A stretch of DNA of 64,000 nucleotides, taken from IMG/VR virus record IMGVR_UViG_3300050120_000230, positions 1-64,000 of that record; one strand, given 5' to 3'. The position numbers were made by a program, and so were the translations under genes. Every line of letters begins with the position of its first letter. Position 1 is the first letter of the stretch. The notes below the pieces were generated by a model that was given only the letters and a program-made list of their open reading frames with translations, had not been told where the DNA came from and searched no databases. Shown one piece after another: positions 35,201 to 58,875 of this stretch.

Positions 35201-38200
35201 GCCAATCAGACGAAGACGAGGCTGACGCAGATTGAACAGCGGCGCGTAAATGATGTCGTTGAAAATCGTCGTATTGTTGAAGATCAAGACGTGCTCGATC
35301 TCACCGATGTTCACGCGCGAACCGAACACATCGGAGTTCTTCGACAACAGCATGGCTTCACCGTCGATACGGTTAACCACGACGTTCTCACGCTTGATCG
35401 GCATACCCGCGCGATCTAGCATTCCGTAGACGCCGTTGATCGGGCTGAGAACGTCCAGAACCATACCGTGATCGGTGTTGAATTTCAGGCCACTAGCGCC
35501 GGGCGACAGGGCGATGAAGTTGCCGGGCTGCCAGTTGACCTGAGACCACGCGAGGAACTCGCGTACAGCCAAGGACCAGTCGAGCGGCTCTTGGGTGTCG
35601 GGATTGACCTGATCGAACACCCAGCCGTGGGCCACGAGGTAACGCTCGTAGCTGAGCAGGAAATCGGCAACTTGTTGGAAGGTCGCGAAGACCGTTCCGT
35701 AGGCAACTTGCTGCGTGTCGGGGCCGCCACGTCCGTAGGTGACAACGCGCGGCGCCTGTTGCGGAATGGCAGAGACCACCGACCAGAAAGTCTGATCGAA
35801 AACCGCACTGCTGGTGTGCCCCTTGATCGCCGAATAGACTGTGCTCTGGTAGGCAACGTTCGTGCCGCTCGGATAATAGGTATTCGGTCGCCATGTGTTG
35901 ATGACGGGCTCCGGCGTTGAGGCCAGACTGATGAGACCCTTCGGGCCATTTTCGAGGCCGGGGATCGTCGTGAAGAACGGTGTGCGAGTGTCGTAACCGA
36001 TCACGCGCCAGCCTTGGCCCGTCCATTCGATGACAACGCCGCTATAGACTTCTTCGCGTGTCGAAGGCGAATGATAGAGTTGCACGTCAACGTCTTCGGC
36101 CGGGAGCAGACCGAAGTTGTCGGCGAGCACGCGCAGGTTGTCAGACGTGGTGAAACCCGCCACCTTGTGGGCGAGCTTGACAGTGAGGCCACGGATAGCC
36201 GAACCGAAGTTCGACGGTGCTTGACCACGCGAAACCATGTAGTCGCTGATCCACTGCTGAACGCCTTCGGCGACGACCTTCGTGCCGGTCAGATCGAGTT
36301 CGCCATGCACGTAGATCGTGCTGTCCAAAGGACGGTTGCCGGTGGGTCCGTAAATCCATTGGCCGGTGTCGTCTTGAATCAGATTAGTGGTGTCCCAACC
36401 TTGCTCAACGAAACGAGCGGGCTTGATGAGGAAACCGATCTGAGCTTGCGCGAAGCAGAACGATTGCGACAGACGCCACAGGGCTTCCACGGGACCGATG
36501 TCTCCGGCCTGCCAAGGTGCAGTCGCCTGCTGATAGGTCGGTGCGTCGGGGATGATGCCACACTGGATGGGATCAAGCAGATTGCCTTCTTCATCGACCG
36601 GAAGAACGAGGTCGAGATCGGCGCGTGCATAACGCACATCGGTGCCAGCACGAGGTCCGCCACGGATCAAACCGTCGCGCAAATCTTCCCACAGTTTGGT
36701 GTTGCCGCTCGTGTAAGGAGCCGGGCCATATTCACCCTGCCACCACGTCGGCTTATCCACAAAGCCGAGCATCTCCCACGGCGCCACATGCGGTCGGAAG
36801 GTATCGTAGTAGAGGATGTAGATGCCGCGCCAATTACCCGGAACCGGGTTAGATTCCCGATCCACGCTGGACGAGAAATTCCATGTGAACGGGTTGGATG
36901 GATCGTAGCTATTATTCGCTCGATAATCGAGACGATTGATCTGAGCCCAGCGTTGGAAATAGGGCGAATACATCGCGTCGATTTCGGCGCTGGTATAGTT
37001 CAGATCGGTAGCCGTTACGAACTTCGTGGCCACGTAATGTTGGAGATCGAACAACGGGCGAGCTTCGGTCTTGAAGCGGGCGTTGATGTTGTCGAAAATG
37101 CGCTGTTCGAGCGCCAGCATGATCGGATCACGCATGTCGCCAAACGCGGGGACTGCACTGCCATCGTGGCCGCGAACCAACGTCACCGGTGAACTGAAAC
37201 TATTGTCCACATAGATGACCGGCTGGCTTACCGAGGCCAGACCCATTGATGCCGGGGTGGGCGGAATGAAGAACTGGCCACCAGCCATCGTGCTCCCCGA
37301 GAACGGGAAGTCACTGGTCTTGTTGAGACGCAGTTGATTGAGGATTGCGGTGACCCACAGTTCAGGAGCGTCGGTGTCCACCAACGTGCCAGCCGCACGG
37401 AAATCGAGGATCGTTTGAACGAATTTGTTGCGGAAACGTGAGTATTCTTGCTCGGCGTAGCGCAGAGAAGACGGTAGATCGTAGTTCGCATTCGCAGAGA
37501 TCAACATCGTCTTCAGGAGCGGAGAACGGTGTTGGAGAATCTTGTTGCCGTTACCCAGAACCTTGGCGGTGTCGCGCCAGTTGTTCACACTGTAGGGGTG
37601 GCCGGTGAACCCAACCTGTTGGGTCATGATCTCGCTAAAATGGTCGAACCATTCGTTGCGGCTGATCGTATCGACTTGCAGATTGCCGGGGTTGGCTTGC
37701 AGGTTCAACGGGATTTCGTAGACACCATTGACCAACGCCTGTGTGCTCGGTGTCGCCACCGGGAACCAGTTGTTGGAGAACGAGCCATTGTCGGTCTCCG
37801 ACAGGAAGTGGTGATAGTAGAAACCACTGACGGTCCCACCAACGTAAGTGACCCGATTGACGACGGGGTCGATCTCGAAGAGCGGCTGTGCAAACGAATT
37901 GACGATGATCGGGAAACCGAGCACTGCGTCCGGTGTGCCCGTGCCAATCTTGTAACCGAACAGACGGCTGCCAGCGAAGTCAGTACCTTGGTAGACGTTG
38001 TCGTCGTTGAGCGCATTCTCCGACGAATCGTAGAGCATGAACAACGGATTTGAAGCGCCAGTCTGAGCGATCTGCCATTCGATACCGTCGAACCAATATT
38101 CCACGGGATCGGTGAACACGCTGTCGGTCGGGTGACCCACGCGAATGATGTCGCCACGTACCGGCTGACCTTCGAGCACGAGTTCGATCACGTCGGCTGT

Positions 38201-39751
38201 GGCGCCGGACGGAAGCGGGGTGTCGGGGTTCGACACGACGCGATAGATGAGGTTGTTCAGCGCGGGTTCGGTCGAGTTGGATTGATGCACGAACAGGCGG
38301 TCGTTTGGTTGCAGAACATAACCATCGTCAACGACCACAGAGCCCACGATGGTGCCGTCCGGCATGTGTGCGAAGAACTGCCCGTTGACCCGCGATAGCG
38401 CGATCTTACCGGTGTCCCAGACGTTGTCGTCGTTGGGGTTCAGGTCCCAATTGTCGATGACATCGACGGTCGAGTTCGAGAGCACGCCTTGCACGTCCGC
38501 AAGACGGCGGGTGCCATAGTTGAACAGTTCGATGTTCGGAAGGAACTCGATGATCGGCCGGGTGGCGCGACGAGAGGCGAAATCTTGACCGGTCCAATCG
38601 AGAGAAGCTTCGTGGACCCAGAGGTTGCGGCGTGTCCACGGGCTATCGTCGCGCGAACGGCGGTCGATCACCACGTATTGGGGCGTAGAACCGCCTGTGT
38701 CGCCCGAGTAGTCGGGTGTTAGATTGATTGCTTGCCCAACGCCGTCGAGGATGAAAGGCCGCCCAGTGGCCACGGTAGTGCCGATTCCGTCGATCAGACG
38801 CACGCGCGAACCCGATGTCGCCATCTGGGCATTGATCGCAGGTTCCCACTTCAGGATGTCGAGCAGGAACCGCACCGATGCGGTGTGTGCGGTGACACAG
38901 GTCCAGACCATCGGGCTGCCGTGCTCATCTTCCGCGAAGGTGAGTTCGCCCACTTCGTAGGTGCGCGGCAGGTTCACATAATCGTTGCTGTCGTTGAGAC
39001 CCGGAAACACCGATTGCCATGCCAAGAACGGCGAGTAATCCAGCGTGACCAGACCGTCGAGAACGGCGGTCATATCGCCATAGCGAATGGTTTCGATGTA
39101 GTCGCCCACCGACAGGCCAGAGGTCGAGATGACCGCATCGCCGTGCGTGGTGACGTTGTTCGCGACTGGCACACCATTGACGAGGACGACCGGCACTTCA
39201 CCTTCGCCGACGAACACGGGATCGGCGGGCGGCAGAGCGTAGGCCGTGGTGGCGGCGTTGCCGTCGTAAACGTAGACCGCGCGTTCAGCGCGCAGGTTGA
39301 TGATCGAGTTCGCAGTCTCGTCGTCGGTGAGCGAACCCATCCAGACGTATTGCAGATAGTTGTTCAGCTTATCGAGATCGACCGGCGGCGCCCACGAGTA
39401 GTAGTCGCCTTCGAACATACGGCTGTGGTTGTTCACGGCCGCGCCCTGCGAACGCAGGTAGTTGATGAGATCGTCGTAGCACAGGCTGTCCGTCAGAACG
39501 CCACCTGTGTTCGACGAGATCATCGCGGGTTCAAGCTGATAGGCAGTGCGCGACGGAGACGGTTCGGCAAGGTAAAAATCCTTGTCCGGGTTGTAGTAAA
39601 CGGGCTTTTGGCCGACGTAACCACTAATCGCTTCCGACTCACCCGGCTGGAACAGTTGATCGACTGTCGCAGCAAAGAAGTTCTTCAGCGTATCCGTTTG
39701 CAGGACAGCCGGAAGCTGGGTGATTAGACGACGCTTGGGAGTCTTGGCCAT
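32264..39751 (-). CDS. Giant virion structural protein (2495 aa)
   Basis: Long clean ORF in the baseplate cluster with TAAATA 4 nt upstream; internal W.P..Y..G..V.Y CBM-like motif. Confidence 0.85.
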   Translation of the reverse strand: MAKTPKRRLITQLPAVLQTDTLKNFFAATVDQLFQPGESEAISGYVGQKPVYYNPDKDFYLAEPSPSRTAYQLEPAMISSNTGGVLTDSLCYDDLINYLRSQGAAVNNHSRMFEGDYYSWAPPVDLDKLNNYLQYVWMGSLTDDETANSIINLRAERAVYVYDGNAATTAYALPPADPVFVGEGEVPVVLVNGVPVANNVTTHGDAVISTSGLSVGDYIETIRYGDMTAVLDGLVTLDYSPFLAWQSVFPGLNDSNDYVNLPRTYEVGELTFAEDEHGSPMVWTCVTAHTASVRFLLDILKWEPAINAQMATSGSRVRLIDGIGTTVATGRPFILDGVGQAINLTPDYSGDTGGSTPQYVVIDRRSRDDSPWTRRNLWVHEASLDWTGQDFASRRATRPIIEFLPNIELFNYGTRRLADVQGVLSNSTVDVIDNWDLNPNDDNVWDTGKIALSRVNGQFFAHMPDGTIVGSVVVDDGYVLQPNDRLFVHQSNSTEPALNNLIYRVVSNPDTPLPSGATADVIELVLEGQPVRGDIIRVGHPTDSVFTDPVEYWFDGIEWQIAQTGASNPLFMLYDSSENALNDDNVYQGTDFAGSRLFGYKIGTGTPDAVLGFPIIVNSFAQPLFEIDPVVNRVTYVGGTVSGFYYHHFLSETDNGSFSNNWFPVATPSTQALVNGVYEIPLNLQANPGNLQVDTISRNEWFDHFSEIMTQQVGFTGHPYSVNNWRDTAKVLGNGNKILQHRSPLLKTMLISANANYDLPSSLRYAEQEYSRFRNKFVQTILDFRAAGTLVDTDAPELWVTAILNQLRLNKTSDFPFSGSTMAGGQFFIPPTPASMGLASVSQPVIYVDNSFSSPVTLVRGHDGSAVPAFGDMRDPIMLALEQRIFDNINARFKTEARPLFDLQHYVATKFVTATDLNYTSAEIDAMYSPYFQRWAQINRLDYRANNSYDPSNPFTWNFSSSVDRESNPVPGNWRGIYILYYDTFRPHVAPWEMLGFVDKPTWWQGEYGPAPYTSGNTKLWEDLRDGLIRGGPRAGTDVRYARADLDLVLPVDEEGNLLDPIQCGIIPDAPTYQQATAPWQAGDIGPVEALWRLSQSFCFAQAQIGFLIKPARFVEQGWDTTNLIQDDTGQWIYGPTGNRPLDSTIYVHGELDLTGTKVVAEGVQQWISDYMVSRGQAPSNFGSAIRGLTVKLAHKVAGFTTSDNLRVLADNFGLLPAEDVDVQLYHSPSTREEVYSGVVIEWTGQGWRVIGYDTRTPFFTTIPGLENGPKGLISLASTPEPVINTWRPNTYYPSGTNVAYQSTVYSAIKGHTSSAVFDQTFWSVVSAIPQQAPRVVTYGRGGPDTQQVAYGTVFATFQQVADFLLSYERYLVAHGWVFDQVNPDTQEPLDWSLAVREFLAWSQVNWQPGNFIALSPGASGLKFNTDHGMVLDVLSPINGVYGMLDRAGMPIKRENVVVNRIDGEAMLLSKNSDVFGSRVNIGEIEHVLIFNNTTIFNDIIYAPLFNLRQPRLRLIGNRAMDWNGRLDIPGYVLIDNVIKSNFDKAATDLLTMWDIEKADNATLRDHARHSIGYDSRDYLASLVLSEVEQFEFYQGLIHQKGAPGAFNKLLRSDFIEQSRDLQFFEEWAIKIDEYGAIQNRNRVAFLFGQSTVKRDPQYIEFRVTDANSPVVSQQPDWIELADSTITGVDSKWVERPNNPLSTFPQRPNAKPLPGDLPVSGYVRLTEVDHTVFSVDDVLTVYDANAGVTLPLGEVVWVHNNLESREISQVSATDWYELGIALGSGHWDGTSNARTLANDQTTVLDDGTRVFQSTAGEAPYISSDDSFVPVPGETYNVSFSVRKTLRETNGIKAFVRPAFDAFKADGSDAPALGTKSGFGFTKQTDMIDTSNWVLDRWYDVECEWTVPISPPFTEARSRLRVNRSYPDDLVTTPYSDAIFEVMSQEMVVSKRPVWDALKVYNLSADGNTNTVANVVTNAEDITLSNTTTRIYTVNPHGLVSTDRGLFIVIDGDTFSDPLLQGVQRVWDLGDNWIDILTTGKKGYEFVSKGQIGPALRVLRTIHFTNLDEFNSFKNRVGVLDGDIAYVDGSPWRVYQRGSITEILDDYADGEVQPDNQITIADDNNRRTDTFKFWNVVRSQPTRMDGARIASSLIYNLKTKVTTTSLEPEPLSLDHLTVVTPLTGIIPGRAKAEIDYIVDYDPANYNVVPSSFDEDGTPSFSSTGQAVGPWGPAQVGRVWWDLKTVRFLETETDNVSFGLTSSSRYNQEVQYRIGHWGQIAPSTSVDVYEWTRSTLHPLEYEAAVLTDTTGTIDGVVYNSENPSWVEAEESVGGVIATYFYFWVKNRLNIPANVGRQMSVATVSNFITNPMIEDQPWIAPVMPNGVLVGGVNPFLDDTFDESTESASSGTVLQIEVSDDDEGVVHDQWLLLRPQDERSLPPEWLWEKLRDSLVGFDQTKMLLPPVLVLPSAVTSVNKPPVWYTGPDADDVPIDPSLR

Positions 39752-41850: not shown

Positions 41851-44800
41851 TTAAGTTACTATAGTGATTGAGAAATCTTGATCGGTGTGATTGTCGGAAG
41901 TAGGCGATCCATACGACGCCCGAAGGGTGTAATGGATGACTGTGCCGTTCGACACACCGGTAACGACCGGCGAGAACAGCACACCTTCGGTAACCAATGT
42001 CGGAGGCGAAGACGGCAGCGTCACGGTGTTTCCGCTATTGAACATGCCGTTCGCGAAATAGATGTTCGCGGCAGCCAAAGCAGATTGCCCAGCAACAATA
42101 GTCTGGTAGATGCCGTTGAATGAACCATCCGAACTGGCCAATGTGACCGCCGGACCAAGCGACGTTCCCAGTCGCGGATTGTATCCGATACCGGCCACGC
42201 CGTTGGCTGTCACGACTTGCCAGACCGGCGGGGAGTGCGCGGTCAGCACGAGTGTGAATGCACGATCTTCGAAGGACAGGCCATTAGATGCACGCAGAGT
42301 GAACGCGTAGTTTTGCGGGTCCTGTGCCGGATCGACCGGCGGGAAGGTGCCGGAAAGCACGCCATCCGGGGTGAGGAAAATACCAGACGGGAAGCTCCCA
42401 GACGATTTCGTATAGGTGATCGGGAAACTGCTGGGGTCGATAGCCGTGAACTGCTTCGAGATGACCGTACCGGGGACATACGCGCCCAAGGAGCCCGGAT
42501 TGGTAGTCCACTCCGGCGCCGGGGTTGCGTCTGTGCCGCGCATCGTAAAGTTGCGAGGAGAGGACAACACGCCGTTTGTAGCCACAACGTCGAACGACCA
42601 AATCTGTTCGCCGAGCACTTCGGGCATCCGGCCGGAGAACACACCCGTGTTCGCGTCGAGGATGATGCCGTTGCCGACATCGCCACCCGGAAGGAGAGCC
42701 GCGTTCGTTTGATAAGTGAGCGGGAGCCCTTGGGGATCGGTTGCGAACAACGTCCCATAGATGAGAGTGCCTTCGTTGACGTTGGCCAACGAGCCGCCGG
42801 GCGTAATCCACACCGGCGGGAGAATTTCTTCCCACGTCTGTTCCCAATCGGGGCTGTTACCCAGCGGGTTACCCGGTTGTTGGGTGTTCGGGGCTCCGGT
42901 CCAAGTAGCCGCAACGTTGGGGCCTCGACCGATGCCATAGGTATAGGCGCCCTGACGTTGGATGACCCAGCCGTTTTCTTCGTCTGTGGCGTCTTCTGTC
43001 GTCTTCACCCAGAAAGTATTTTCGCGGGTGGCGATGGCGTTTGCCGAAATCTGGAACGCGACGGCGCCGAGATCGTAGCTATCGCCACCGAGTTCACGAC
43101 GCAGAGCTTCGGTTTCGAAGACGTTCACCGCGCCGACCAGCGGCACGTAACCAACGTCGCTGTTCTGCCAGAACAAATATCGGCCTTGGTCACGCGGATC
43201 GGTCACGGACTCAAAAGTCGTCGGATCGTCGGGGAAACCATTCAGATTGTAGTCTGCGAAACTAACGGTGACGCGGGTCGGGTCGGCCGAACCGTCGCGG
43301 TTGATGTAGATGCGATTGACCGCGAGGTCGTAGTCCTTCGGCAGGGCTTGGCCTTCTTCGCCCGCCGCCAAGTTTTCGTTGATCTTCAAGACGCGGACGT
43401 AATCCATCGTCTCGACACCGGTTTCGGAATCGACAGTCTTGCGGCCGTCGTTATACCACTGAACTTTCTTCAGGCTCTCGAAGACATAGCGCAATCCATT
43501 GGCGATGATCGACCACACGCCACCGGCGCCATAGGTCACGGTCATGACTTCGAAACTGGTCGCAGTCGGTGTCTCCGGGCTCAACACCCAAGACGGAACG
43601 TTGGTGGACGGATCGATGGCGTAGTCGAACCACAGCGTGAACGATTGATTGTTGCGGATGAAAGTCTGCATCGCCGTCGAGGTCGCGGCATCCAAGCCGG
43701 AATTGAACCTCGGGATGACGCGAGAGATGGTCGCACCGTCCGGCACGCTCAACGACAAGGTCACAGGACCAGCCGTTCCGGCCGGGGGCGGATCGGTTTC
43801 AGTGCCGGTGATGTTGGAGATTGTGGCCCACAGAAGGGTGCCGTTCGAGTCGAACTCGACGATGGCGCCTTCCACGAGATACAGGTTGGCATCCGAGAAA
43901 TAGCCGGTGCTGCTGAAGCTTACGTCAGAGTCCGCCCGGTTCCAGATGATCCCGAACGGTGCATTCACGTCGGCCATGATGGCGTCGGACTGGTGCAACA
44001 AATAGTCCTGCGCGTAATTCAGCACCTCTTGACGAGTGAGCACGGGCTGAATGTAGAGCGAGACGATATCTCCCGCCGAGGGCGCGAGCGACATGGGAAC
44101 TTCAGTGTAGATGTCGTAGGGTTCACGGAAGAAAAGGCCGTCATCAGCGAAGACATCCACGTCCTGATAGGTGCCGGTCGGGTCGTTGAGATCGATGAAG
44201 CGAGAATGGCCGGAATAGATGCGGTTGATCGCCTTCAGCTTCACAGCCAAATTGCTTTGCAGCGGGAACGTGTTGTAGTCCTCGCCGGAGACCATGCGGT
44301 TCTGCGTCGCGTAGACGGACGGGGCGCGAGCCTTGATCTGATCGTCGGTTTCGCGCGGAGTCGAGTTCGAGACGGCTGATTGCAGCGAGAACGTGAGGGT
44401 GAGGGTCTTCTTGACGCCTGCACGATTGTAGTAGGGCAACGACAGTTTCACCCGGTTCATGTCGGTCGGGCGAATCTGATATTGCTGCCCGTTGGACACA
44501 CGATAGAAGACGCGGATGTTGCCGGTCGGAACGGTGCCGAAGCGGCCATCCGAGAAGCGCACGCTGATTGCATCGTCGGTGCGGGTGATGACCGAGAAAA
44601 TGTCTCGGATCGTCGGGTCAAAGTTGTTGTAGGTGATGTTCTCGTTGAACAGCGCCGGGACCTTACTCCACGATTGCAGGACATTGCCGCTATCGGTGAC
44701 GGTCTGCACCCACACGTCGGTGTCGTTGACGTTCAGTGCGTCGATGTCGAGGACGTTGTTTTCGACGGGCGTGGGCAGGCTGAACACGTTCCGCTGAAGC

Positions 44801-45582
44801 GTGCCCTGCTTGAACATCATGAAGAAACCGGTCTGGCCGCTCGAATTGCCGTTGCCGTCATTCCGGTAGAACATGTGGAAAGCGTTTTGATAGTCGGGTT
44901 CGCGCTCCGAGAAACCACCGCCATCGTCGAAATCACCGTTGACGACTTCGAAGTCCATCGACGAACCATTGACCTTGGCCGCGAAGCCTAGGTTGGCTTC
45001 GGACATCAGGTTGTTCACGCGATAGAGTTGGGTATCGATGCCACTCACGTCGCCGTCTTTGAGCGGCACACCGAATGGATTGGTCGAGATGTAGGCGCTG
45101 TTGAGCACGAGCACGAAGCGTTCGAACCAATCCGGGTCATCCGGGTTGTCCCACTGAATCGTGCTGCCGTTGAGGTTCGTGCCAAAACCGTCGAGCACAT
45201 CATCGTCGGTCATCACTTCGACCAGCTTGACGAGGCCCTGTGCGGTTTGGTTGCGGCGCGGGTTGTAGGAGATGAAACGAGCAAGACGAAGGATGCTCAG
45301 GCGGCTTTCGGCCGTCTCAAGGAAGCTCTCACGAGCATTGAGGTCAGTCTTGAACGCCAGCGTACCCGCGAGCCACGACAACAGGTCAATGAGCGCCACG
45401 AACTCAGACGACTCGATCCAGTCGTTGAAGTTTTCCGGGTAGTTCTGTTGGATATAGTCGCGCAGAGCACGGTTGATCGACGGCGGATCACTCGCGTTGA
45501 AGTTCACATCGGTGAATGCACGGTAGAGAACCTGCCAGTCTTGACCGGCAAACAACTCACTCTGGCGGATACTCTGCGACAA
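41851..45582 (-). CDS. Baseplate wedge (gp6-like) N-terminal part fused to Ig repeats
   Basis: YPENFNDWIESSEFVALID, NARESFLETAE, FSDGRFGTVP, ETDDQIKARAP..QNRMVSGEDY; follows gp25. Confidence 0.85.
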   Translation of the reverse strand: MSQSIRQSELFAGQDWQVLYRAFTDVNFNASDPPSINRALRDYIQQNYPENFNDWIESSEFVALIDLLSWLAGTLAFKTDLNARESFLETAESRLSILRLARFISYNPRRNQTAQGLVKLVEVMTDDDVLDGFGTNLNGSTIQWDNPDDPDWFERFVLVLNSAYISTNPFGVPLKDGDVSGIDTQLYRVNNLMSEANLGFAAKVNGSSMDFEVVNGDFDDGGGFSEREPDYQNAFHMFYRNDGNGNSSGQTGFFMMFKQGTLQRNVFSLPTPVENNVLDIDALNVNDTDVWVQTVTDSGNVLQSWSKVPALFNENITYNNFDPTIRDIFSVITRTDDAISVRFSDGRFGTVPTGNIRVFYRVSNGQQYQIRPTDMNRVKLSLPYYNRAGVKKTLTLTFSLQSAVSNSTPRETDDQIKARAPSVYATQNRMVSGEDYNTFPLQSNLAVKLKAINRIYSGHSRFIDLNDPTGTYQDVDVFADDGLFFREPYDIYTEVPMSLAPSAGDIVSLYIQPVLTRQEVLNYAQDYLLHQSDAIMADVNAPFGIIWNRADSDVSFSSTGYFSDANLYLVEGAIVEFDSNGTLLWATISNITGTETDPPPAGTAGPVTLSLSVPDGATISRVIPRFNSGLDAATSTAMQTFIRNNQSFTLWFDYAIDPSTNVPSWVLSPETPTATSFEVMTVTYGAGGVWSIIANGLRYVFESLKKVQWYNDGRKTVDSETGVETMDYVRVLKINENLAAGEEGQALPKDYDLAVNRIYINRDGSADPTRVTVSFADYNLNGFPDDPTTFESVTDPRDQGRYLFWQNSDVGYVPLVGAVNVFETEALRRELGGDSYDLGAVAFQISANAIATRENTFWVKTTEDATDEENGWVIQRQGAYTYGIGRGPNVAATWTGAPNTQQPGNPLGNSPDWEQTWEEILPPVWITPGGSLANVNEGTLIYGTLFATDPQGLPLTYQTNAALLPGGDVGNGIILDANTGVFSGRMPEVLGEQIWSFDVVATNGVLSSPRNFTMRGTDATPAPEWTTNPGSLGAYVPGTVISKQFTAIDPSSFPITYTKSSGSFPSGIFLTPDGVLSGTFPPVDPAQDPQNYAFTLRASNGLSFEDRAFTLVLTAHSPPVWQVVTANGVAGIGYNPRLGTSLGPAVTLASSDGSFNGIYQTIVAGQSALAAANIYFANGMFNSGNTVTLPSSPPTLVTEGVLFSPVVTGVSNGTVIHYTLRASYGSPTSDNHTDQDFSITIVT

Positions 45583-52400: not shown

Positions 52401-52406
52401 TAAATA
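52401..52406 (+). promoter_or_regulatory. Late promoter TAAATA driving the leader peptide-tRNA unit
   Basis: Same motif and 5-nt spacing as at other late genes. Confidence 0.75.
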
Positions 52407-52487: not shown

Positions 52488-52559
52488 GTGCCCGTAGTTC
52501 AGTGGAAGAACGCCTTTTTTCTAAATTGGTCGTCGCAGGTTCGAACCCTGCCGGGCATT
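52488..52559 (+). tRNA. tRNA-Arg(UCU), imperfect anticodon stem
   Basis: Acceptor GTGCCCG/CGGGCAT, D arm GTTC/GAAC, T arm GCAGG-TTCGAAC-CCTGC, anticodon TCT at 52520-52522; two U-U mismatches; no encoded CCA. Confidence 0.8.
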
Positions 52560-52563
52560 CAAT

Positions 52564-52639
52564 GATCCTTTAGCTCAACAGGAAGAGCGCATCTTTCCTA
52601 AAGATGAGGTTGCTGGTTCGAGCCCAGCAAGGGTCGCCA
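52564..52639 (+). tRNA. tRNA-Arg(CCU)
   Basis: Full cloverleaf, anticodon arm CATCT-TTCCTAA-AGATG, A20, discriminator G, encoded CCA. Confidence 0.95.
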
Positions 52640-52996: not shown

Positions 52997-53317
52997 TCAG
53001 ACGCTTTCGAGCTTGACCCCAAGGATCATGGCCATGGCCTGCATGATGTCGCCGCCATAGCAATGACCGCTACCGTAGCCACCATCACCGAGCTTGGGAG
53101 AGAACGTGTCGCTCGAACTAGCGAGTTCGTTCTTCTTCTCCCACTTGTCGTAGTTCTTCCAGAGCTTTTCCTGCTCACGCTCCGGCACGTCCGTATCGTC
53201 GATGTCGAAAGGATTTTCTGACGGATGCACTCGGTAGAGCCGCCAGTAGTCGTTATCGATGATGGCGACGCAACCGGGGTTGTCCTTCAGAATCTTGATG
53301 AGATTCCGCTTAGCCAT
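52997..53317 (-). CDS. Hypothetical protein
   Basis: Starts MAKRNLIKILKDNPGC; overlaps the peptidase stop. Confidence 0.65.
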   Translation of the reverse strand: MAKRNLIKILKDNPGCVAIIDNDYWRLYRVHPSENPFDIDDTDVPEREQEKLWKNYDKWEKKNELASSSDTFSPKLGDGGYGSGHCYGGDIMQAMAMILGVKLESV

Positions 53318-54620
53318 TGAGTGCAGCCGCCACCAACGAGGTATAGTCCTTGGGGGCGGCGTTCCCGGCGACGACCACGGTGGTCTTGCCGGTGACCAGT
53401 TGCTTCGCGGCGGCGATGATATCGTCCTTGGTGAGCGAGGTGTATTTCTGCACCGTTTCGCCCATCGTGATGACATTGCCGTCGTTGAAGAACATGTCGG
53501 TGGCCGCTTGGATGCCGACCGAACGAGTCGCTTCGGAGCGCATGACGATCTGGCGGACGACTTGGTTCTTGGCTCGCGTGAGATCGGTGTCGTCGAGTTC
53601 GCCGTTCGCGACCTTCTTCAGTTCGCCAACCGCGACGGTCAGGAACTCATCGACGTTCTCGGCGGCGGCCGATCCGCCGATCAGGAAAATGCTCCCATCG
53701 GCTTGCGGCGACATTCCGCAGCTAACCGAGTAGCAGAGGCCGCGCTTCTCGCGAACGTTCTGGAAGAGCGGCGAGGACATACCACTGCCGAGAACGTCGC
53801 TCAGCAGATCATAGGCAGCGAAATTGGCGTCGTAGTTGCCCGGCGCCGGGAGGCCGACGTAGAGATGGGCCTGTTCGAAACGACTGTCCTGCACGACGGT
53901 CTCGCCGCCGACGTAGTTCGAGGGCACCGAGGGGATCACGGTCTTGCCTTCGACATCGCTGAAACGCTTGGTGACTTCCGCCAAGAACTCGGCGTGGTCC
54001 ACGGCGCCGACTGCCAGCACGATCATGTTGTTCGCGTGGTAGTGCTTGTCCATGTAGGCGTCGAGGGCTGCCTTGTCGAAGCCCCGGACGTTTTCCTTCG
54101 GGCCGAGGATCGGGCGGCCCAGAGGTTGGTTCGGATAGGCCGTGCGGACCATCGCCTCGTAGGCGATGTCATGGATGTCGTCGTTGCTCTCGTTGATCTC
54201 TTCGACGACCACGCCCTGTTCGCGCTTCAGTTCTTCAGCCGGGAACGTGGAGTTCTTCAGAACGTCCGAGAGAATGTCCAGCGCCGGGACGATGTGATCC
54301 GGCAGGCCCATGACGTAGTAGGCGGTCATGTTGGAACTGGTGAAGGCATTGGGCGCCGCGCCGAGGTATTCCACCTCCAAGCTGATCTGCTTGGTGTTGC
54401 GGCTGGTCGTGCCCTTGAAGGCCATGTGTTCGAGGAAGTGAGAGATGCCGTTCTCCGCTTCGGTCTCGGAACGCGAGCCCACGCGGTTGAAAACGGACAC
54501 CATCACGGTGTGGATCGGACGCTTGACTGTGGCCACCCTCAACCCGTTGGCCAAGGTGGTGATCTCGACTGCTTCTGCGGCCGATTCGGATGCGGTGTGA
54601 TCCAGACTGAAATTGTGCAC
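53310..54620 (-). CDS. M16 (pitrilysin/MPP-like) zinc peptidase
   Basis: GSRSE...GISHFLEHMAFKGT (HxxEH), NAFTS, LGSGMSSPLFQNVREKRGLCY; AAGGAG SD. Confidence 0.95.
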   Translation of the reverse strand: MHNFSLDHTASESAAEAVEITTLANGLRVATVKRPIHTVMVSVFNRVGSRSETEAENGISHFLEHMAFKGTTSRNTKQISLEVEYLGAAPNAFTSSNMTAYYVMGLPDHIVPALDILSDVLKNSTFPAEELKREQGVVVEEINESNDDIHDIAYEAMVRTAYPNQPLGRPILGPKENVRGFDKAALDAYMDKHYHANNMIVLAVGAVDHAEFLAEVTKRFSDVEGKTVIPSVPSNYVGGETVVQDSRFEQAHLYVGLPAPGNYDANFAAYDLLSDVLGSGMSSPLFQNVREKRGLCYSVSCGMSPQADGSIFLIGGSAAAENVDEFLTVAVGELKKVANGELDDTDLTRAKNQVVRQIVMRSEATRSVGIQAATDMFFNDGNVITMGETVQKYTSLTKDDIIAAAKQLVTGKTTVVVAGNAAPKDYTSLVAAALNG

Positions 54621-54773
54621 GAAAACTCCTTTAACTGAATGCTCCCAAGGTAGGACGGTTAACCATTTTGGTCAACCAAATTATTTCCGCGCCAAATCCA
54701 TATCTGGATCAGAGATTAAGTCCTACCACCGAAGCGGTATTCGTCAACAAAAAGCGCCCCGCATAAATAAGGG

Positions 54774-55373
54774 ATGCCTCTCGATCTCGAAAAAATCCAA
54801 GACAGCCCTCACCTTCTGGACATCTTGCTTCAGATGGAAGACGTGCTCGACTCGCTCGACGTTTACGTCTTCAAGAACTGGTATCTCGGCGAGATCGCCG
54901 AGGGGCCGACTGTTCGCCGTTACTGGCTCGATTTCACGCTGAAATATCCTTACGATAAGATGCCCGACCCGAAAGCGGCCCTGCGGCTGCTCAAGCACGG
55001 CATCCGTGTGGACTTCTGGAAGGCGAAACTCGAAGACGGCGAGTTCAAAGACGCCGATCAGATGGAGAAAGAAGCCACGGCCGAAGAAGGCACTGAATCC
55101 GATCCGGCCAAAGACCCGGTGGAAGACACAGTCTGGATGGTCCGCATCAGCATCCCGCGCCGCCTTGCCGCGCAGATGTCCTCCGAAGAGATGGACTTCT
55201 ACGATGACGAAGTGGACGTGGACGACGTTGAAGACGCCAAGGACACCGGCATCGACGACGAGAGCGCCTACATGTCGGGTGAAGATGGTCAGCAGGCTCC
55301 GGGTGACCCGAATGCCCCGCCGCCGGGATCGCCTGACGATCAGCAGCAACCGCCGCCCGGAGGCCCCGCCTAA
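54774..55373 (+). CDS. Acidic late hypothetical protein
   Basis: TAAATA 4 nt upstream; YVFKNW..GE...GP...RYW, MPDP. Confidence 0.75.
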   Translation: MPLDLEKIQDSPHLLDILLQMEDVLDSLDVYVFKNWYLGEIAEGPTVRRYWLDFTLKYPYDKMPDPKAALRLLKHGIRVDFWKAKLEDGEFKDADQMEKEATAEEGTESDPAKDPVEDTVWMVRISIPRRLAAQMSSEEMDFYDDEVDVDDVEDAKDTGIDDESAYMSGEDGQQAPGDPNAPPPGSPDDQQQPPPGGPA

Positions 55374-56149
55374 TGGCTACGCTCAACGAGGGTATGCGGC
55401 CCGGTGACCTTGAGGACTTGGTCCTACCGATGCTCACCATCGACGAATATGAGAGCAAGCTCGATGACGACGCCATCGTGATGGGCTTCTACGTCAGCGA
55501 CAAGGATGCCGCTGGTGATCTGAATCGTTACATCCAAAAATCGCCTGTGCAGATGTTGGACACCGAGGTCTCCCCGGCGCCGGATCAGCACGGCTACTAT
55601 ATCGTGTTCATCGAACTCCTCAACGACATTCGTATCGTGGACAACATGGAGGCCATCCTCGAAGAGGTGAGCCCGCTCACGGCCACTGAAGAATGGCAGA
55701 TGCGTCTACGCGGGAATGAAGAAGGCGTGATGCCTTTTTCGTCCAAAGTTCTGAGCCATCGGTTCGCTGAACTCCGTTCGGAAAACGTGGATGGCGAACC
55801 GGGCGGCGGACACGCCGAACACCCTGAGACAGAAAGTCGCGTAATGGAATTCTTCCAACCCAGCGATCTGAAAAACGTGGTCATCGAAGGTCATCGTTTG
55901 GTTCTCACTGGACATGACAGTGAGTTTCGGGCAGAAATTGTTGCGTTCGGTGAAGCAGAATCCCTATTGGATTCATATAACCTCTCCGAGAGTGCATTCT
56001 CTCTGAACCTCACCGACATCGCAAAGTCTCTGAAAATGACGCGTTTGCTCGGTGATGGCTGGATGTCTAGCCGCCTCGGAGAACACTCTATTCTTCAGCA
56101 CGTTGGCTCCGATTCGGCGCTTTTGCTGCGGAACGCGCGCTTCGTTTAA
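55373..56149 (+). CDS. Late hypothetical protein
   Basis: TAATG-coupled; LTIDEYESKL, DTEVSP. Confidence 0.75.
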   Translation: MATLNEGMRPGDLEDLVLPMLTIDEYESKLDDDAIVMGFYVSDKDAAGDLNRYIQKSPVQMLDTEVSPAPDQHGYYIVFIELLNDIRIVDNMEAILEEVSPLTATEEWQMRLRGNEEGVMPFSSKVLSHRFAELRSENVDGEPGGGHAEHPETESRVMEFFQPSDLKNVVIEGHRLVLTGHDSEFRAEIVAFGEAESLLDSYNLSESAFSLNLTDIAKSLKMTRLLGDGWMSSRLGEHSILQHVGSDSALLLRNARFV

Positions 56150-56272
56150 GTCAAGTTAGGAATTATGGCCAAGCTCTAATTTTGACGTGGCTGAACTCCG
56201 TGGGCCGTGGTTAGTTCCCTCCATCGACCGGGCGATTACCACCCGGCGACGTTATAAAAGTCGGAGGGGAAA

Positions 56273-56617
56273 TTGGGCGTCGAAGTCTTGGAAATTCTCT
56301 GCAATTGGAGAGGCATCAACAACCTGAGAAGCGCCAAACAGGAGACCCTATGGCCGAGCATCGAAAGCTTGCGTCATCAAGGGGTCGTTCCCTGTGAGAA
56401 GCCTACCAGCGTTTTGCTAGCACTTCCCCAACGAGACGACATTGACATCATGGAACTGCGCGATTGGCTCGACCTGAACGCGAAGGGCCACTTCAAGATG
56501 TTCAATCGTTTCAACTATGACGAGCAACGATATCAGATCAAGCGAGCTTACGTCGGTGTGAACTTCCGTTTCACTGACCCGAAAGAGGCTTGTCTTTTCA
56601 AGTTGTTCTGGACCTGA
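56273..56617 (+). CDS. Hypothetical protein (WL...F.F.D..A..FKL family)
   Basis: GGAGG SD 5 nt before TTG; DWLDLNAKG...FRFTDPKEACLFKLFW. Confidence 0.6.
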   Translation: MGVEVLEILCNWRGINNLRSAKQETLWPSIESLRHQGVVPCEKPTSVLLALPQRDDIDIMELRDWLDLNAKGHFKMFNRFNYDEQRYQIKRAYVGVNFRFTDPKEACLFKLFWT

Positions 56618-56688
56618 TCGAGTAAAAACCACTCAAGACCCCTACTCGGCGCTCGCTAAATATAGCGAGGGTCAGAGTAGGTGTTCTT

Positions 56689-56937
56689 GTGGACGGAGTA
56701 ATTGGGTCGATTTTGCAAGTTATGACGAGCGGGAATGGAGCGCAAGCTCTCCCGATCATCATGGGCTTGATTATCTGGCATCTGCTAGAAGAGAATAAAA
56801 AACTCAAAGCAGAGAACCAGAAAAAAGATGAACGCATCGACAAAATCGTTGATGACTATCATCGTGGTAATTTGACGCTGACGGAAGCGTTGAACTCGTT
56901 GAAGCTCGTGCTCTTCGAGATCAAGGGCAAAATCTAA
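56689..56937 (+). CDS. Small membrane protein with coiled coil
   Basis: One TM segment; TAAATA at 56657-56662. Confidence 0.65.
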   Translation: MDGVIGSILQVMTSGNGAQALPIIMGLIIWHLLEENKKLKAENQKKDERIDKIVDDYHRGNLTLTEALNSLKLVLFEIKGKI

Positions 56938-58151
56938 TGCGTTGGCCGTTTAGCAATAGCAAACGGCTACAAGAAGCGCGTGCCCGAGAGGTCATGCGCG
57001 ACCTGATGGTGCTTGAGAGCCAAGAGGCTCTTCTGGAAGCCGCCGTCACCACCGCCGACGCGGCCAACTTCGTCACCAACCGCCTTCGATCCAAGCTGCA
57101 AGACAGCGTCGATCAGATCGAATCGACGGCGCGCATCCTGAACGACGCACTGGTCATTTGCGACGACAGCGGTCACATTCAAGCGTTCAACCCGGCTGCC
57201 GAGGCCATGTTCAACACCACGGCCGAAGCCGCTATCTCGACCTTTGTCGGTAGCCTGCTTCAGAGCACAAACCACGCGATCACCGAAGCCGATGATATCT
57301 GGACCATGCTCGATCATATCGACGAGGCCGAGGAAGAGCACGATTTGCACGGGCGGCGCGGGGACGTTCTATTCCCACTGGACGTGAACCACACGCGGCT
57401 CGACCGTTCAGATGGCACGACCATCTTCCTGCTCATCATGCGCGACACGTCGCGTGCCCACGACGGAGTGAAGCTGAAAGGCTATCGCTCCATTTTTGAA
57501 TCCAGCTTCGACGGCATCCTTGTCCTTAAGGACGGGGCCATTGTCGCCGCAAATCCGGCCGCTACGACGGTCTTTGGCTACAACGTCGAGGAACTGCTCT
57601 CTAAGAGCCTTGAGGCGCTGTTCATGTGCGGACGCGAACATACGCCGGTCCCGCTGACGGGTGGCGAAGTTGAGGTGATGGTCGAAGGCAAGCACCGCGA
57701 TGGCCACCTCATGGAAATGTTCTTCACCACCACGACGATCTGGTGGAACGGCGAGTCAGCCACGCTCATCACGATCAAGGACATCACGCCCGTCAAGGCG
57801 CTCGGCGCCGAAGATGCCGAAGCGATGATCTGCTGCTTTGACTCCGACTACCGCATCACGTTCGTGAACAGCGCCTACGCCACGTTCTACGGCCAGAAGC
57901 GCGAGAACCTGATCGGCGAAGACATTCGCACGCTGCTCCCGGCAAACGAGTGCAGCCCCTTCCTCATCCACATCAACAGCCTGACACCGACCGAGCCCAC
58001 TCGCCGTATGCAGCTTCGTTCGACAGATGAGAACGGCGAACATCGCCTTCAGGTTTGGACTGACCACGCATCGTTCGATGACGACGTGGTGGAGTATCAG
58101 CGGATCGGCCGCGATATCTCAAATACGATCACGACCACAACCCGGTCCTGA
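56937..58151 (+). CDS. Triple PAS-domain protein without output domain
   Basis: DALVICDDSGHIQAFNPAAEAMF, DGILV..IVAANPAATTVFGY..EELL, ICCFD..RITFVNSAY..FYG..E.LIG. Confidence 0.85.
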   Translation: MRWPFSNSKRLQEARAREVMRDLMVLESQEALLEAAVTTADAANFVTNRLRSKLQDSVDQIESTARILNDALVICDDSGHIQAFNPAAEAMFNTTAEAAISTFVGSLLQSTNHAITEADDIWTMLDHIDEAEEEHDLHGRRGDVLFPLDVNHTRLDRSDGTTIFLLIMRDTSRAHDGVKLKGYRSIFESSFDGILVLKDGAIVAANPAATTVFGYNVEELLSKSLEALFMCGREHTPVPLTGGEVEVMVEGKHRDGHLMEMFFTTTTIWWNGESATLITIKDITPVKALGAEDAEAMICCFDSDYRITFVNSAYATFYGQKRENLIGEDIRTLLPANECSPFLIHINSLTPTEPTRRMQLRSTDENGEHRLQVWTDHASFDDDVVEYQRIGRDISNTITTTTRS

Positions 58152-58875
58152 TCGTCATCAACCGTTCAAGCATGGCTTGATCCTGAGCATCGTAGAAATC
58201 GGAAGTCTTTCGTATTTTCTCGTGTGCGTCTTTCGTCCCCTGATCTCGTCGGTTCAATATTTGAAGGCCGACGCTCTTATCGACACCTTCCCAGATACGA
58301 TAGTCATGGCCGACATCGCACCGACACGGGCGGTGGTCTTTCCACCAGAGATATAGGTCGCGAGCAATCACCGCTTGCTCGGACTGTTGCGGCGACATCA
58401 TTTGAATCTCGGGATCGGTCGCTTCCCACTCTAGGTAGGCCAATCCCGCGACGCGGCCATGTTTGCGAGGCCAGCGATCAGCGACGAACTTCGGAAGACC
58501 TTTGGGCACACGTTCATCGTGCCATTGCCAGTTACGAGCCGACAGGCCGACTTCGATATGCATGACCAAAAGATCGAAGTTTGCGTAAAGCATGAGGCGG
58601 TCAATGTCATGATTGCCCGGCCCCAACGACTTCACGTTGATGATGTGCGTGCGATTGGTCGTGCGGTTTCGAATCCAATTGACGCCGTTTTTGTAAATCC
58701 TGATCCAGCGACGGATACGGCTAGGCACGGTTTGTTGCAGGAAGACACGCACTGGGAAACGATGGCGCTGGGAGGTTTTGATCCGTTCCCATACTTCCCA
58801 CGTCGCGGCCGTGGGACTGGTCAATAGGAACCAACCAAGCCCTCTCGGCTTGGAACTACGACGAAGGCGGGTCAA
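58129..58875 (-). CDS. Hypothetical protein
   Basis: 248-aa ORF in a minus-strand operon. Confidence 0.6.
   Translation of the reverse strand: MTRLRRSSKPRGLGWFLLTSPTAATWEVWERIKTSQRHRFPVRVFLQQTVPSRIRRWIRIYKNGVNWIRNRTTNRTHIINVKSLGPGNHDIDRLMLYANFDLLVMHIEVGLSARNWQWHDERVPKGLPKFVADRWPRKHGRVAGLAYLEWEATDPEIQMMSPQQSEQAVIARDLYLWWKDHRPCRCDVGHDYRIWEGVDKSVGLQILNRRDQGTKDAHEKIRKTSDFYDAQDQAMLERLMTIRTGLWS

What the first reader, a model, noticed from the sequence alone, without database searches (positions are those of the whole stretch)
56650..58151. Late membrane protein coupled to a PAS-only sensor
Seen: TAAATA lies within the inverted repeat CTCGCTA-AATA-TAGCGAG. An 82-aa TM/coiled-coil gene is TAATG-coupled to a protein with an N-terminal helical region and three PAS domains but no kinase or cyclase. 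Inference: a two-part sensor, possibly tuning lysis timing if the small protein is holin-like, or jamming host PAS kinases.
Basis: inference. Interest (0 to 1): 0.6.

Follow-up and report, generated by a model that had tools for sequence, protein, structure and literature searches.

The report
Jumbo-phage membrane anchor plus PAS-only protein
A giant phage carries a conserved, phage-only gene pair (a tiny membrane protein and a sensor-type PAS protein with no enzyme part) behind a T4-style hairpin and late-promoter switch; the anatomy is solid, but what the pair senses or controls is still unknown.

Summary
The window is the first 64 kb of a 415-kb jumbo-phage record related to Sinorhizobium phage Phosso and Agrobacterium phage Atu_ph07.

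An 82-aa gene (56689-56937) overlaps a 404-aa gene (56937-58151) by TAATG. The small protein has an N-terminal transmembrane helix and a near-invariant C-terminal helical hairpin. The large protein is a 60-residue helix followed by three PAS domains, with no output domain.

In every locus where the downstream DNA is held, including all distant ones, a helix-plus-PAS gene (1 to about 4 PAS domains) follows the small gene. No fusions were found, and no copy in 185,579 prokaryote species genomes. Atu_ph07 gp48, the small homologue, was detected by mass spectrometry in phage preparations; the PAS partner gp49 was not.

The 7-bp repeat is the tip of a 40-55 nt hairpin (-34 kcal/mol, z = -5.3). Its loop carries TAAATA and its 3' arm pairs the Shine-Dalgarno sequence and start codon. 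The hairpin recurs with different stem sequences in about ten relatives. This matches the T4 gene e/49/soc/I-TevI design: only transcripts from the embedded late promoter would be translatable.

A holin role, lysis timing and kinase jamming remain untested guesses. No lysis gene lies nearby, and complex prediction gave no verdict.

The parts
56634..56692 (+). Long RNA hairpin. Core stem 56640-56658 pairs with 56663-56683; loop AAUA at 56659-56662; outer pairs reach the GUG start.
   Evidence: Fold of 56630-56700: -34.1 kcal/mol, z = -5.25. Fold of 56620-56730: -40.7 kcal/mol, z = -4.18, with the start codon paired. Same architecture with other stem sequences in L010, L009, L003, L011, L006, L013, L014, L019, and weaker in L018 and L016.
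56657..56662 (+). TAAATA, a late-promoter-like motif (core of T4 TATAAATA) at the hairpin tip, 26 nt before the start codon.
   Evidence: 20 in the window against 4.2 expected. Sits upstream of virion and tail-fibre genes. The only conserved block in the otherwise diverged upstream regions. Present 23-48 nt upstream in 21 of 23 loci.
56678..56683 (+). Shine-Dalgarno-like TAGGTG, 5 nt before the GTG start. It lies in the 3' arm of the hairpin.
   Evidence: Sequence. Paired in the long RNA and unpaired in an RNA starting at 56668 (-9.7 kcal/mol, z = 0.34).
56689..56937 (+). Gene for an 82-aa bitopic membrane protein: amphipathic N-terminus, TM helix about residues 17-34, charged helix, G60-N61 turn, last helix 64-81.
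   Evidence: ORF. 65 clusters in the word search and 136 representatives in the profile search, all about 80-100 aa, with no Pfam or PHROG family. C-terminal 24 residues 84% mean pairwise identity. AF2 helices 2-13, 17-58, 64-81. Atu_ph07 gp48 detected by MS.
56935..56939 (+). TAATG stop/start overlap coupling the two genes.
   Evidence: Sequence. The same 1-nt overlap occurs in Phosso, L009, L010, L022, L027 and L029; Atu_ph07 has a 4-nt overlap.
56937..58151 (+). Gene for a 404-aa PAS-only protein.
   Evidence: Pfam PAS_9, PAS_4, PAS and PAS_8 above cut-off, with no output domain. 57 phage clusters of 250-425 aa, then a gap to cellular kinases at E = 1e-9. AF2 pLDDT 76. Foldseek top hit is triple-PAS PpsR, 4hh2.
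56955..57140 (+). N-terminal long helix (residues 7-68). This is the most conserved part of the PAS protein and the proposed docking or dimerisation helix.
   Evidence: AF2. Residues 20-68 have 61% mean pairwise identity against 44-46% for the PAS domains. Present in all partners, including the 188-aa single-PAS form.
57141..57452 (+). PAS1 (residues 69-172), the PAS domain present in all family members; invariant C75.
57489..57788 (+). PAS2 (residues 185-284).
57816..58121 (+). PAS3 (residues 294-395).

Best explanation
This is a conserved, phage-only, late-expressed two-gene module of T4-superfamily jumbo phages.

Gene 1 encodes an 82-aa bitopic inner-membrane protein. From charge distribution, the short acidic N-terminus is inferred to lie outside and the C-terminus in the cytoplasm. 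Its cytoplasmic part is a near-invariant helical hairpin.

Gene 2 is translationally coupled to gene 1. It encodes a soluble protein made of a long, highly conserved N-terminal helix followed by PAS domains (three here, 1 to about 4 in relatives) and no enzymatic or DNA-binding output.

Most likely mechanism (inferred): the small protein's cytoplasmic hairpin packs against the N-terminal helix of the PAS protein. This tethers the PAS protein to the membrane and forms a split, output-less sensor. Any signal would be passed on by protein contacts, most plausibly through the membrane protein itself.

Expression appears to be gated as in T4 genes e, 49, soc and I-TevI. Transcripts reading through from the upstream virion-gene operon would fold into a hairpin of -34 to -41 kcal/mol that pairs the Shine-Dalgarno sequence and the GUG start. 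Transcripts starting about 6 nt downstream of the TAAATA at the hairpin tip would lack the 5' arm and be translatable.

Shown: the genes, domains, conservation, adjacency, motif enrichment, hairpin stability and hairpin conservation.

Inferred: membrane topology, physical binding, promoter activity and the switch. What is sensed and what is controlled is not known.
For: Pair conservation:
- The small gene is followed by a helix+PAS gene on the same strand in the window, Phosso, Atu_ph07 and all metagenomic loci with downstream DNA.
- This holds in distant members too, with 1 PAS (L027, 188 aa) or at least 2 PAS (L029).
- Only mobile or foreign genes ever separate the two (L011 GIY-YIG, L004).
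- There are no fusions among 136 representatives, and no copy in the genomes of 185,579 prokaryote species.

Matching conservation peaks:
- Small-protein residues 59-82 have 84% mean pairwise identity.
- The PAS N-helix has 61%, against 44-46% for the PAS domains (alignments).

PAS-only architecture.

Expression:
- Atu_ph07 gp48 gave 3 unique peptides and 37% coverage in PEG-purified phage (PMC6102473 Table S5).
- TAAATA is enriched 5-fold and sits before virion and tail-fibre genes.
- It is the only conserved upstream block and is present in 21 of 23 loci.

Hairpin:
- z = -5.25. The long RNA pairs SD and start; the short RNA leaves them free.
- It is conserved with at least five different stem sequences.
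- TAAATA sites in general are not hairpin-associated: 12 of 140 against 292 of 3000 random sites. The structure is therefore specific to this site.

Against: - No direct evidence of binding. The one complex prediction gave no verdict.
- No gp55-like late sigma was found in the 415-kb record, although the record is only 72% complete.
- The upstream operon is itself probably late (TAAATA at 54764). The hairpin would then separate two late units rather than early from late, as it does in T4.
- In L003, L011, L006 and L019 the hairpin is followed by a T-run and looks like a plain terminator that does not cover the SD.
- Phosso, Atu_ph07, L024, L005 and L004 have TAAATA but no hairpin.
- The PAS partner gp49 was not detected in the Atu_ph07 preparation, where gp48 was.
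- The TM helix is predicted only from hydropathy and AF2; no dedicated topology predictor was run.
Confidence: 0.55

Rival explanations
1. Lysis-timing device. The small protein is a holin- or antiholin-like membrane protein. The PAS protein reads host energy, redox or ligand state in the cytoplasm and tunes when the small protein triggers, as a cytoplasmic counterpart of T4 RI/RIII control of holin T.
For: The protein is small, has a single TM segment, has a highly charged C-terminus and is expressed late. Language-model features put it near BhlA/UviB holin-like peptides at 0.88, which is a lead only. In T4, the RBS-hiding hairpin with an embedded late promoter guards genes that are harmful if made early, such as lysozyme gene e.
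Against: No holin HMM match in Pfam for any of 54 members, and none in PHROGs for the window and Phosso proteins. No Phage_lysozyme, SLT or T-holin match in the record, and no lysis enzyme within about 8 kb. The very strong conservation of the C-terminus is atypical for holins. The neighbours are virion genes. The 0.88 score is below the tool's own 0.9 mark.
Confidence: 0.17
2. Virion or morphogenesis role. The small protein is a particle-associated or assembly-site membrane protein (for example an ejection or prohead-initiation factor). The PAS protein is its cytoplasmic chaperone or regulator and is not packaged.
For: Atu_ph07 gp48 and its neighbours gp46, gp47 and gp50 were detected in phage preparations, and gp49 was not. 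The pair sits next to genes matching PHROG 'virion structural protein' families and an M16 peptidase in many relatives. In L027 it follows SLT-domain and Collar tail genes. Translational coupling suits chaperone-client pairs.
Against: The preparation was only PEG-purified and also contained ribonucleotide reductase, RecA-like, SSB and terminase proteins, so membrane debris could account for gp48. PAS domains are not known assembly chaperones.
Confidence: 0.15
3. Host-signalling interference. The membrane-tethered PAS-only protein heterodimerises with PAS domains of host histidine kinases or other PAS proteins and blocks or redirects them.
For: PAS domains commonly dimerise. There is no output domain. 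The nearest cellular relatives are PAS histidine kinases, at E = 1e-9.
Against: Late expression is a poor fit for host take-over. The family is far from any host PAS protein (26-30% identity over one domain). The host is unknown and no target is identified. The conserved partner is a phage protein, not a host one.
Confidence: 0.07
4. The hairpin is only the terminator or 3'-end stabiliser of the upstream operon, which happens to overlap the next promoter. It plays no part in translation control.
For: Relatives L003, L011, L006 and L019 have a GC stem followed by a T-run that does not reach the SD. Compact terminator/promoter overlaps are common in phages.
Against: In the window, L010, L009, L008 and L013 there is no T-run, and the 3' arm runs into TAGGTG and, in the window, the start codon. 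The terminator scan finds nothing at this site.
Confidence: 0.3

Closest known systems
T4 genes e (lysozyme), 49, soc and I-TevI: RBS-sequestering hairpin with an embedded late promoter (PMC3014915)
   Same: A T4-type late-promoter core (TAAATA) lies in the DNA that encodes the upstream part or tip of an RNA hairpin. The 3' arm of that hairpin pairs the Shine-Dalgarno sequence and start codon. Transcripts started at the late promoter would lack the 5' arm.
   Different: The motif is TAAATA preceded by C or A, not TATAAATA; only 3 TATAAATA occur in 415 kb. The promoter sits in the loop. The upstream transcription is probably also late. No transcript ends are mapped, and no gp55 homologue was found in the incomplete record.
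Membrane-anchored PAS sensor histidine kinases (FixL, LOV-HK, DosP type) and multi-PAS regulators such as PpsR
   Same: Tandem PAS folds follow a long helix. The best structural matches are PpsR (4hh2), Brucella LOV-PAS, DosP and FixL.
   Different: There is no kinase, cyclase, phosphodiesterase or HTH output. The membrane anchor is a separate gene product. There is no LOV NCRF motif, and no conserved histidine in PAS1 or PAS2.
Small bitopic membrane proteins with a cytoplasmic coiled coil: BhlA/UviB holin-like peptides (PF10960); by recollection also PspB
   Same: About 70-80 aa, one N-terminal TM helix and a charged helical C-terminus. The ESM-Atlas feature score to BhlA clusters is 0.88.
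   Different: No HMM-level similarity: none of the 54 members matched. There is no adjacent lysin. The resemblance to PspB comes from memory of its architecture only and was not tested.
VqmA of vibriophage VP882 (phage-encoded PAS receptor, PMC8284805)
   Same: A phage-encoded PAS-domain protein used to read a signal.
   Different: VqmA has a DNA-binding output and belongs to a temperate phage. This protein has no output domain, has a membrane partner, and is found in jumbo phages related to lytic Atu_ph07. No sequence relation was seen in the searches.

Membership tests
PAS domain superfamily (Pfam PAS_9, PAS_4, PAS, PAS_8) | HMM match above the curated cut-off | tested here: met
   PAS_9 83.7 bits (cut-off 27), PAS_4 74.8 (23.1), PAS 70.9 (22.6); three stretches.
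PAS domain superfamily | Five-stranded antiparallel sheet flanked by helices | tested here: met
   The AF2 model has three such units at 71-170, 185-282 and 297-393. Foldseek probability is 1.00 to PpsR, LOV-PAS, DosP and FixL PAS domains.
Sensor histidine kinase (the annotation of Atu_ph07 gp49) | HisKA/DHp and HATPase_c domains | tested here: not met
   Only PAS families match in the window protein, Atu_ph07 gp49, Phosso and six metagenomic partners.
LOV (flavin) PAS | Conserved Cys in the GxNCRFLQ motif | tested here: not met
   0 of 22 family members carry NCRF-type motifs.
Heme PAS (FixL type) | Conserved proximal His in the F-alpha helix | tested here: not met
   The only His conserved at 80% or more is H377, in a PAS3 strand. 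None is conserved in the F-alpha helices. Other cofactors or ligands are not excluded.
Holins (general) | Small size, at least one TM domain, charged C-terminus, late expression | tested here: met
   82 aa, one hydrophobic segment, K/E/D-rich C-terminus. The late motif is present, and the homologue was seen by MS in lysate-derived phage preparations.
Holins (general) | Linkage to an endolysin or lysis cassette, or match to a holin family | tested here: not met
   No holin HMM. No Phage_lysozyme, SLT or Phage_holin_T match in the record. No lysis enzyme among the neighbours. T4 lysis genes are also unlinked, so this is weak evidence.
Holins (general) | Forms lethal membrane lesions and releases endolysin | not testable with these tools
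   Needs expression and complementation assays.
BhlA/UviB holin-like peptides (PF10960) | HMM match | tested here: not met
   None of the 54 members match at E <= 1. The only link is the feature similarity of 0.88.
T4 gene e-type translational switch | Late-promoter motif inside the DNA that encodes the hairpin | tested here: met
   TAAATA at 56657-62 lies at the tip of the hairpin at 56634-56692. The same holds in about ten relatives.
T4 gene e-type translational switch | SD and/or start codon paired in the long transcript and free in the late transcript | tested here: met
   By prediction only. Long RNA: -40.7 kcal/mol, with TAGGTG and GUG paired. RNA from 56668: -9.7 kcal/mol, z = 0.34, with the SD open.
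T4 gene e-type translational switch | Mapped late 5' ends, and gp55-type sigma present | tested here: inconclusive
   No reads could be obtained. No gp55-like match in the 72%-complete record. Relative Atu_ph07 has one (gp694 = phrog_12791).
Intrinsic terminator | GC-rich stem followed by a T-run | tested here: not met
   The window hairpin is followed by GTTCTTGTG, and the scan finds nothing at the site. The feature is met in relatives L003, L011, L006 and L019.

The most novel reading that the evidence does not exclude
Jumbo phages carry their own split, membrane-tethered PAS sensor. Late in infection it would read a host-cell state (energy, redox or a metabolite) and act through its 81-aa membrane partner to decide when the envelope is breached or particles are released. 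That would be a cytoplasmic, ligand-gated counterpart of T4 lysis inhibition. The module would be kept silent until late by a gene e-type RNA switch.
Probability: 0.15. Interest if true: 0.8.

Novelty: new variant of a known kind. Interest (0 to 1): 0.55.

Why it matters
PAS domains are the commonest sensory modules of bacteria, but an output-less PAS protein locked to a dedicated membrane partner has not been described in lytic phages. Full-text searches found nothing on it. [quoted passage not shown]

The pair is widespread in very large soil and water phages and is strictly viral. Two members, Atu_ph07 and Phosso, grow on laboratory hosts, so the function can be tested directly.

If the module senses host state, it would be a new way for a virulent phage to make a late-infection decision.

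The hairpin and promoter arrangement also extends a classic T4 translational switch to distant, GC-rich jumbo phages. It gives a conserved structural landmark for locating their late promoters.

Tried and rejected
- Complex prediction (PAS residues 1-180 with the small protein, using own alignments) returned 'no answer' with a score of 0.14 against a mark of 0.32. It counts neither for nor against binding.
- Nucleotide search of the phage collection found no match.
- PHROGs has no family for the small protein and only noise for the PAS protein.
- A profile of the small family against PDB sequences returned only chance-level hits with E >= 0.016.
- An ESM-Atlas shape search of the small-protein model returned generic helical hairpins (recombinase coiled coils, CheZ), which are uninformative.
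- The BhlA/UviB lead from language-model features (0.88) was not confirmed by Pfam scans of 54 members.
- Rfam has no family at 56000-58500.
- The sigma-70 promoter scan finds nothing upstream of the small gene, and the terminator scan finds nothing at the hairpin.
- I tested whether all TAAATA sites sit in hairpins. They do not: 12 of 140 against 9.7% of random sites. My first criterion was too lax (69 of 140 against 280 of 600 controls).
- Searches for a gp55-like sigma in the record all came back empty, and the record is incomplete: Atu_ph07 gp694 as protein, phrog_12791, phrog_234, and tblastn at E <= 10.
- Phage_holin_T, Phage_lysozyme and SLT gave no match in the record. The holin-T search rang in no control genome, so it shows little.
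- The covariance model R1 recovered the hairpin in L013, L003, L011 and L014. Its automatic alignment mixed in reverse-strand and spurious hits, so I did not use it for pair counts.
- No other genetic code was used.
Full report
**Context.** The window is bases 1-64000 of a 415,409-bp IMG/VR virus record that CheckV rates 72% complete. Its GC content is 55%. Its flap endonuclease/RNase H is closest to those of Sinorhizobium phage Phosso (469 kb, 42% identity) and Agrobacterium phage Atu_ph07 (490 kb, 39%), followed by PA5oct- and CBB-type jumbo phages. The window holds giant virion proteins, tail-fibre genes, two tRNA-Arg genes and an M16 peptidase. The finding therefore lies in a T4-superfamily jumbo phage.

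**Observation.** All features are present at the stated coordinates.
- The small gene is an 82-aa ORF at 56689-56937 with a GTG start, preceded by TAGGTG 5 nt upstream.
- The PAS gene is a 404-aa ORF at 56937-58151.
- The two overlap as TAATG.
- Pfam finds three PAS stretches well above cut-off and nothing else.
- AlphaFold2 on a 22-sequence alignment (pLDDT 76) gives one long helix at residues 7-68 and PAS folds at 71-170, 185-282 and 297-393.
- Foldseek's best match is the triple-PAS protein PpsR, followed by LOV-PAS, DosP and FixL.

Automatic gene callers had started both genes too late (M20 for the PAS gene; M12 for the small gene). Alignments show the N-termini M-x-W-x-F and M/V-D/E-x-x-I-G conserved, with homologues starting at ATG in the same place. 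The longer forms and the coupling are therefore real.

**The small protein.** It belongs to an unnamed family.
- The word search found 65 clusters, and a full profile search found 136 representatives at 50% clustering.
- Almost all members are 78-104 aa and stand alone. The one long hit (3151 aa, 28 stretches) is a repetitive coiled coil.
- There is no Pfam, PHROG or PDB relative.
- The layout is an amphipathic N-terminal helix, a G-G(P) break, a hydrophobic helix at about residues 17-34 (Kyte-Doolittle 1.82) running on into a K/E/D-rich helix to residue 58, an invariant G60-N61 turn, and a last helix at 64-81.
- Residues 59-82 show 84% mean pairwise identity across the family. The motif is DDYxKGNLTLTEALNSLKLVLxEIKGK.
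- The acidic short N-terminus and the basic residues after the hydrophobic helix suggest an N-out/C-in topology. This is an inference.
- No member was found in one genome per 185,579 prokaryote species, so the family appears to be strictly viral.

**The pair is obligate.** The small gene is followed on the same strand by a helix+PAS gene in Phosso, Atu_ph07 and every metagenomic locus that extends far enough.
- The junction is a 1-nt overlap as here, or a 4-nt overlap in Atu_ph07, in about half of the loci, and a short gap in the rest.
- Only a GIY-YIG homing endonuclease gene (L011) or an opposite-strand gene (L004) ever intervenes.
- Distant members of the small family keep the rule while the partner shrinks or grows: 188 aa with one PAS (L027), 295 aa with two (L005), and 536-545 aa with about four (Atu_ph07, L023).
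- The constant core is therefore small protein + N-helix + PAS1.
- Within the PAS protein the N-helix (residues 20-68) is the most conserved part: 61% mean pairwise identity against 44-46% for the PAS domains.
- The two most conserved segments, one in each protein, are both predicted to be cytoplasmic helices. This is the basis for proposing that they dock. It is an inference; the only complex prediction gave no verdict (see Tried and rejected).

**Cofactor.** No LOV NCRF motif occurs in 22 members, and no conserved histidine lies in an F-alpha helix. The invariant residues of PAS1 are C75, G79, N85, A88 and F92, together with the H-T-R-L-D-R-S-D-G loop. What the domains bind, if anything, is open.

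**Expression.** TAAATA is five-fold over-represented in the window (20 against 4.2 expected). Genome-wide there are 140 sites, nearly all preceded by C or A. In the window these sites precede genes matching virion and tail-fibre PHROGs.

Upstream of the small gene, the intergenic regions of relatives have diverged beyond recognition except for TAAATA. The motif lies 23-48 nt before the start in 21 of 23 distinct loci. It is absent only in L027 and L029, where the small gene abuts the preceding gene.

In Atu_ph07 the small homologue gp48 (9.11 kDa) was identified by ESI-MS/MS with 3 unique peptides and 37% coverage, along with neighbours gp46, gp47 and gp50. The PAS partner gp49 is not listed (PMC6102473, Table S5). 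I matched gp numbers to the record by gene lengths. That preparation was only PEG-purified and also contained RNR, SSB, RecA-like and terminase proteins. It shows that gp48 is made, in a phage-derived preparation, rather than that it sits in the particle.

**The hairpin.** The 7-bp repeat is the tip of a much larger structure.
- RNA from 56630-56700 folds at -34.1 kcal/mol (z = -5.25; 0 of 200 shuffles as stable), with AAUA as the loop.
- With more flank (56620-56730) the fold is -40.7 kcal/mol, and the 3' arm pairs TAGGUG and the GUG start.
- An RNA beginning at 56668, where a T4-type late promoter would start (about 6 nt after the motif; spacing taken from knowledge of T4), has no significant structure (-9.7 kcal/mol, z = 0.34) and an open SD.
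- The same design, TAAATA in the loop of a stable stem, recurs in L010, L009, L003, L011, L006, L013, L014 and L019 (z from -4.3 to -7.5), and more weakly in L018 and L016.
- The stem sequences differ between loci, so the pairing rather than the sequence is conserved. Examples are CCCTCGC/GCGAGGG, GGTCACGC/GCGTGACC, GTCATCCC/GGGATGAC and GCTCTCAA/TTGAGGGT.
- Across the genome, TAAATA sites are not hairpin-prone (12 of 140 against 292 of 3000 random sites). This site is the most stable of all 140.
- In one subgroup (window, L010, L009, L008, L013) the 3' arm runs into the SD. In another (L003, L011, L006, L019) it is followed by a T-run like a terminator.
- In either form, the hairpin would keep transcripts from the upstream operon (199-, 258- and 114-aa genes behind the TAAATA at 54764) from expressing the pair, leaving the pair dependent on its own promoter.

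This is the arrangement described for T4 genes e, soc, 49 and I-TevI (PMC3014915). Three caveats apply. No 5' ends are mapped. No gp55 homologue was found in this incomplete record, although Atu_ph07 has one. The upstream unit is probably also late.

**Function.** The evidence supports a membrane-tethered, output-less PAS module made late in infection. It does not say what the module controls.
- Lysis-timing idea: it rests on generic holin-like features, a sub-threshold resemblance to BhlA/UviB peptides and the T4 analogy for why a gene is kept silent. Against it are the absence of any holin HMM match, the absence of nearby or detectable lysis enzymes and the unusual conservation of the C-terminus.
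- Virion or assembly role: the neighbourhood and the MS data favour it, but the sample purity weakens that evidence.
- Host-kinase jamming: there is no evidence for it, and it fits late timing poorly.

**Novelty.** Full-text searches returned no description of this pair. The known phage PAS receptor VqmA differs in having a DNA-binding output. I rate the finding as a new variant of known kinds: PAS signalling modules and the T4 hairpin/late-promoter switch. It has moderate interest and a testable, more exciting possibility.

**Limits.** No alternative genetic code was needed. Proteins known only from GenBank phage records (Phosso, Atu_ph07) were kept out of the alignments handed to the fold and profile jobs.

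Noticed in passing
whole record G000; in the window e.g. 8571, 17719(-), 28664(-), 29456(-), 39761(-), 47891(-), 49998(-), 52401, 54764: 53 of the 140 TAAATA sites have ATG or GTG exactly 4-5 nt downstream. C or A is preferred at -1 and -2, and the spacer tends to be nnGG. If TAAATA is a gp55-type -10 element, these late mRNAs would be leaderless or nearly so. Otherwise the motif is part of an unusual translation-initiation region. The canonical T4 TATAAATA occurs only 3 times in 415 kb.
   Followed up: partly
G000 263694(-), 196771(+), 248504(+), 102284(+), 309647(+), 216734(-), 261553(-), 271770(-), 267411(-), 407868(+): A recurrent 'TAAATAnnGGATGCG' suggests a family of paralogous late genes that all begin Met-Arg. 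This recalls the run of about 30-kDa paralogous virion proteins (gp55-65) in Atu_ph07.
   Followed up: no
L011 2774-3559; L004 4284-4943: A GIY-YIG/NUMOD3 homing endonuclease gene is inserted exactly between the small gene and the PAS gene in one 564-kb relative. In another relative a 219-aa opposite-strand gene sits at the same junction.
   Followed up: no
window 53310-54620(-), 54774-55373, 55373-56149, 56273-56617: The upstream block is conserved across many relatives: an M16 peptidase on the opposite strand, two genes matching PHROG 'virion structural protein' families (phrog_12928, phrog_13138), and a gene of about 114 aa with no family.
   Followed up: partly
window 52488-52560 and 52564-52639: Two adjacent tRNA-Arg genes (anticodons TCT and CCT), with a TAAATA at 52401 just upstream.
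   Followed up: no
whole record G000: No homologue of the T4 gp55-type late sigma (Atu_ph07 gp694, phrog_12791 or phrog_234) was detectable in the 415-kb record, even by tblastn at E <= 10. Either it lies in the missing 28% or it has diverged strongly.
   Followed up: partly
window 56937-58151 and 56689-56937: Public gene calls start both genes too late (385 aa from M20; small protein from M12), which hides the TAATG coupling. The Atu_ph07 partner is annotated as a histidine kinase although only PAS domains are present.
   Followed up: yes
window 24706-28653(-), 32264-39751(-), 41851-45582(-): Very large ORFs of 1315, 2495 and 1243 aa. The first matches a PHROG virion structural protein, and TAAATA lies just upstream of the first two.
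   Followed up: no
L005 1-903: An IS605 OrfB/TnpB (Cas12f-like) gene lies about 3 kb upstream of the pair in a 457-kb relative.
   Followed up: no
window 58129-58875(-) against 56937-58151(+): The PAS gene's 3' end overlaps the 3' end of a convergent 248-aa ORF by 23 nt. No terminator-like site was detected between them.
   Followed up: no
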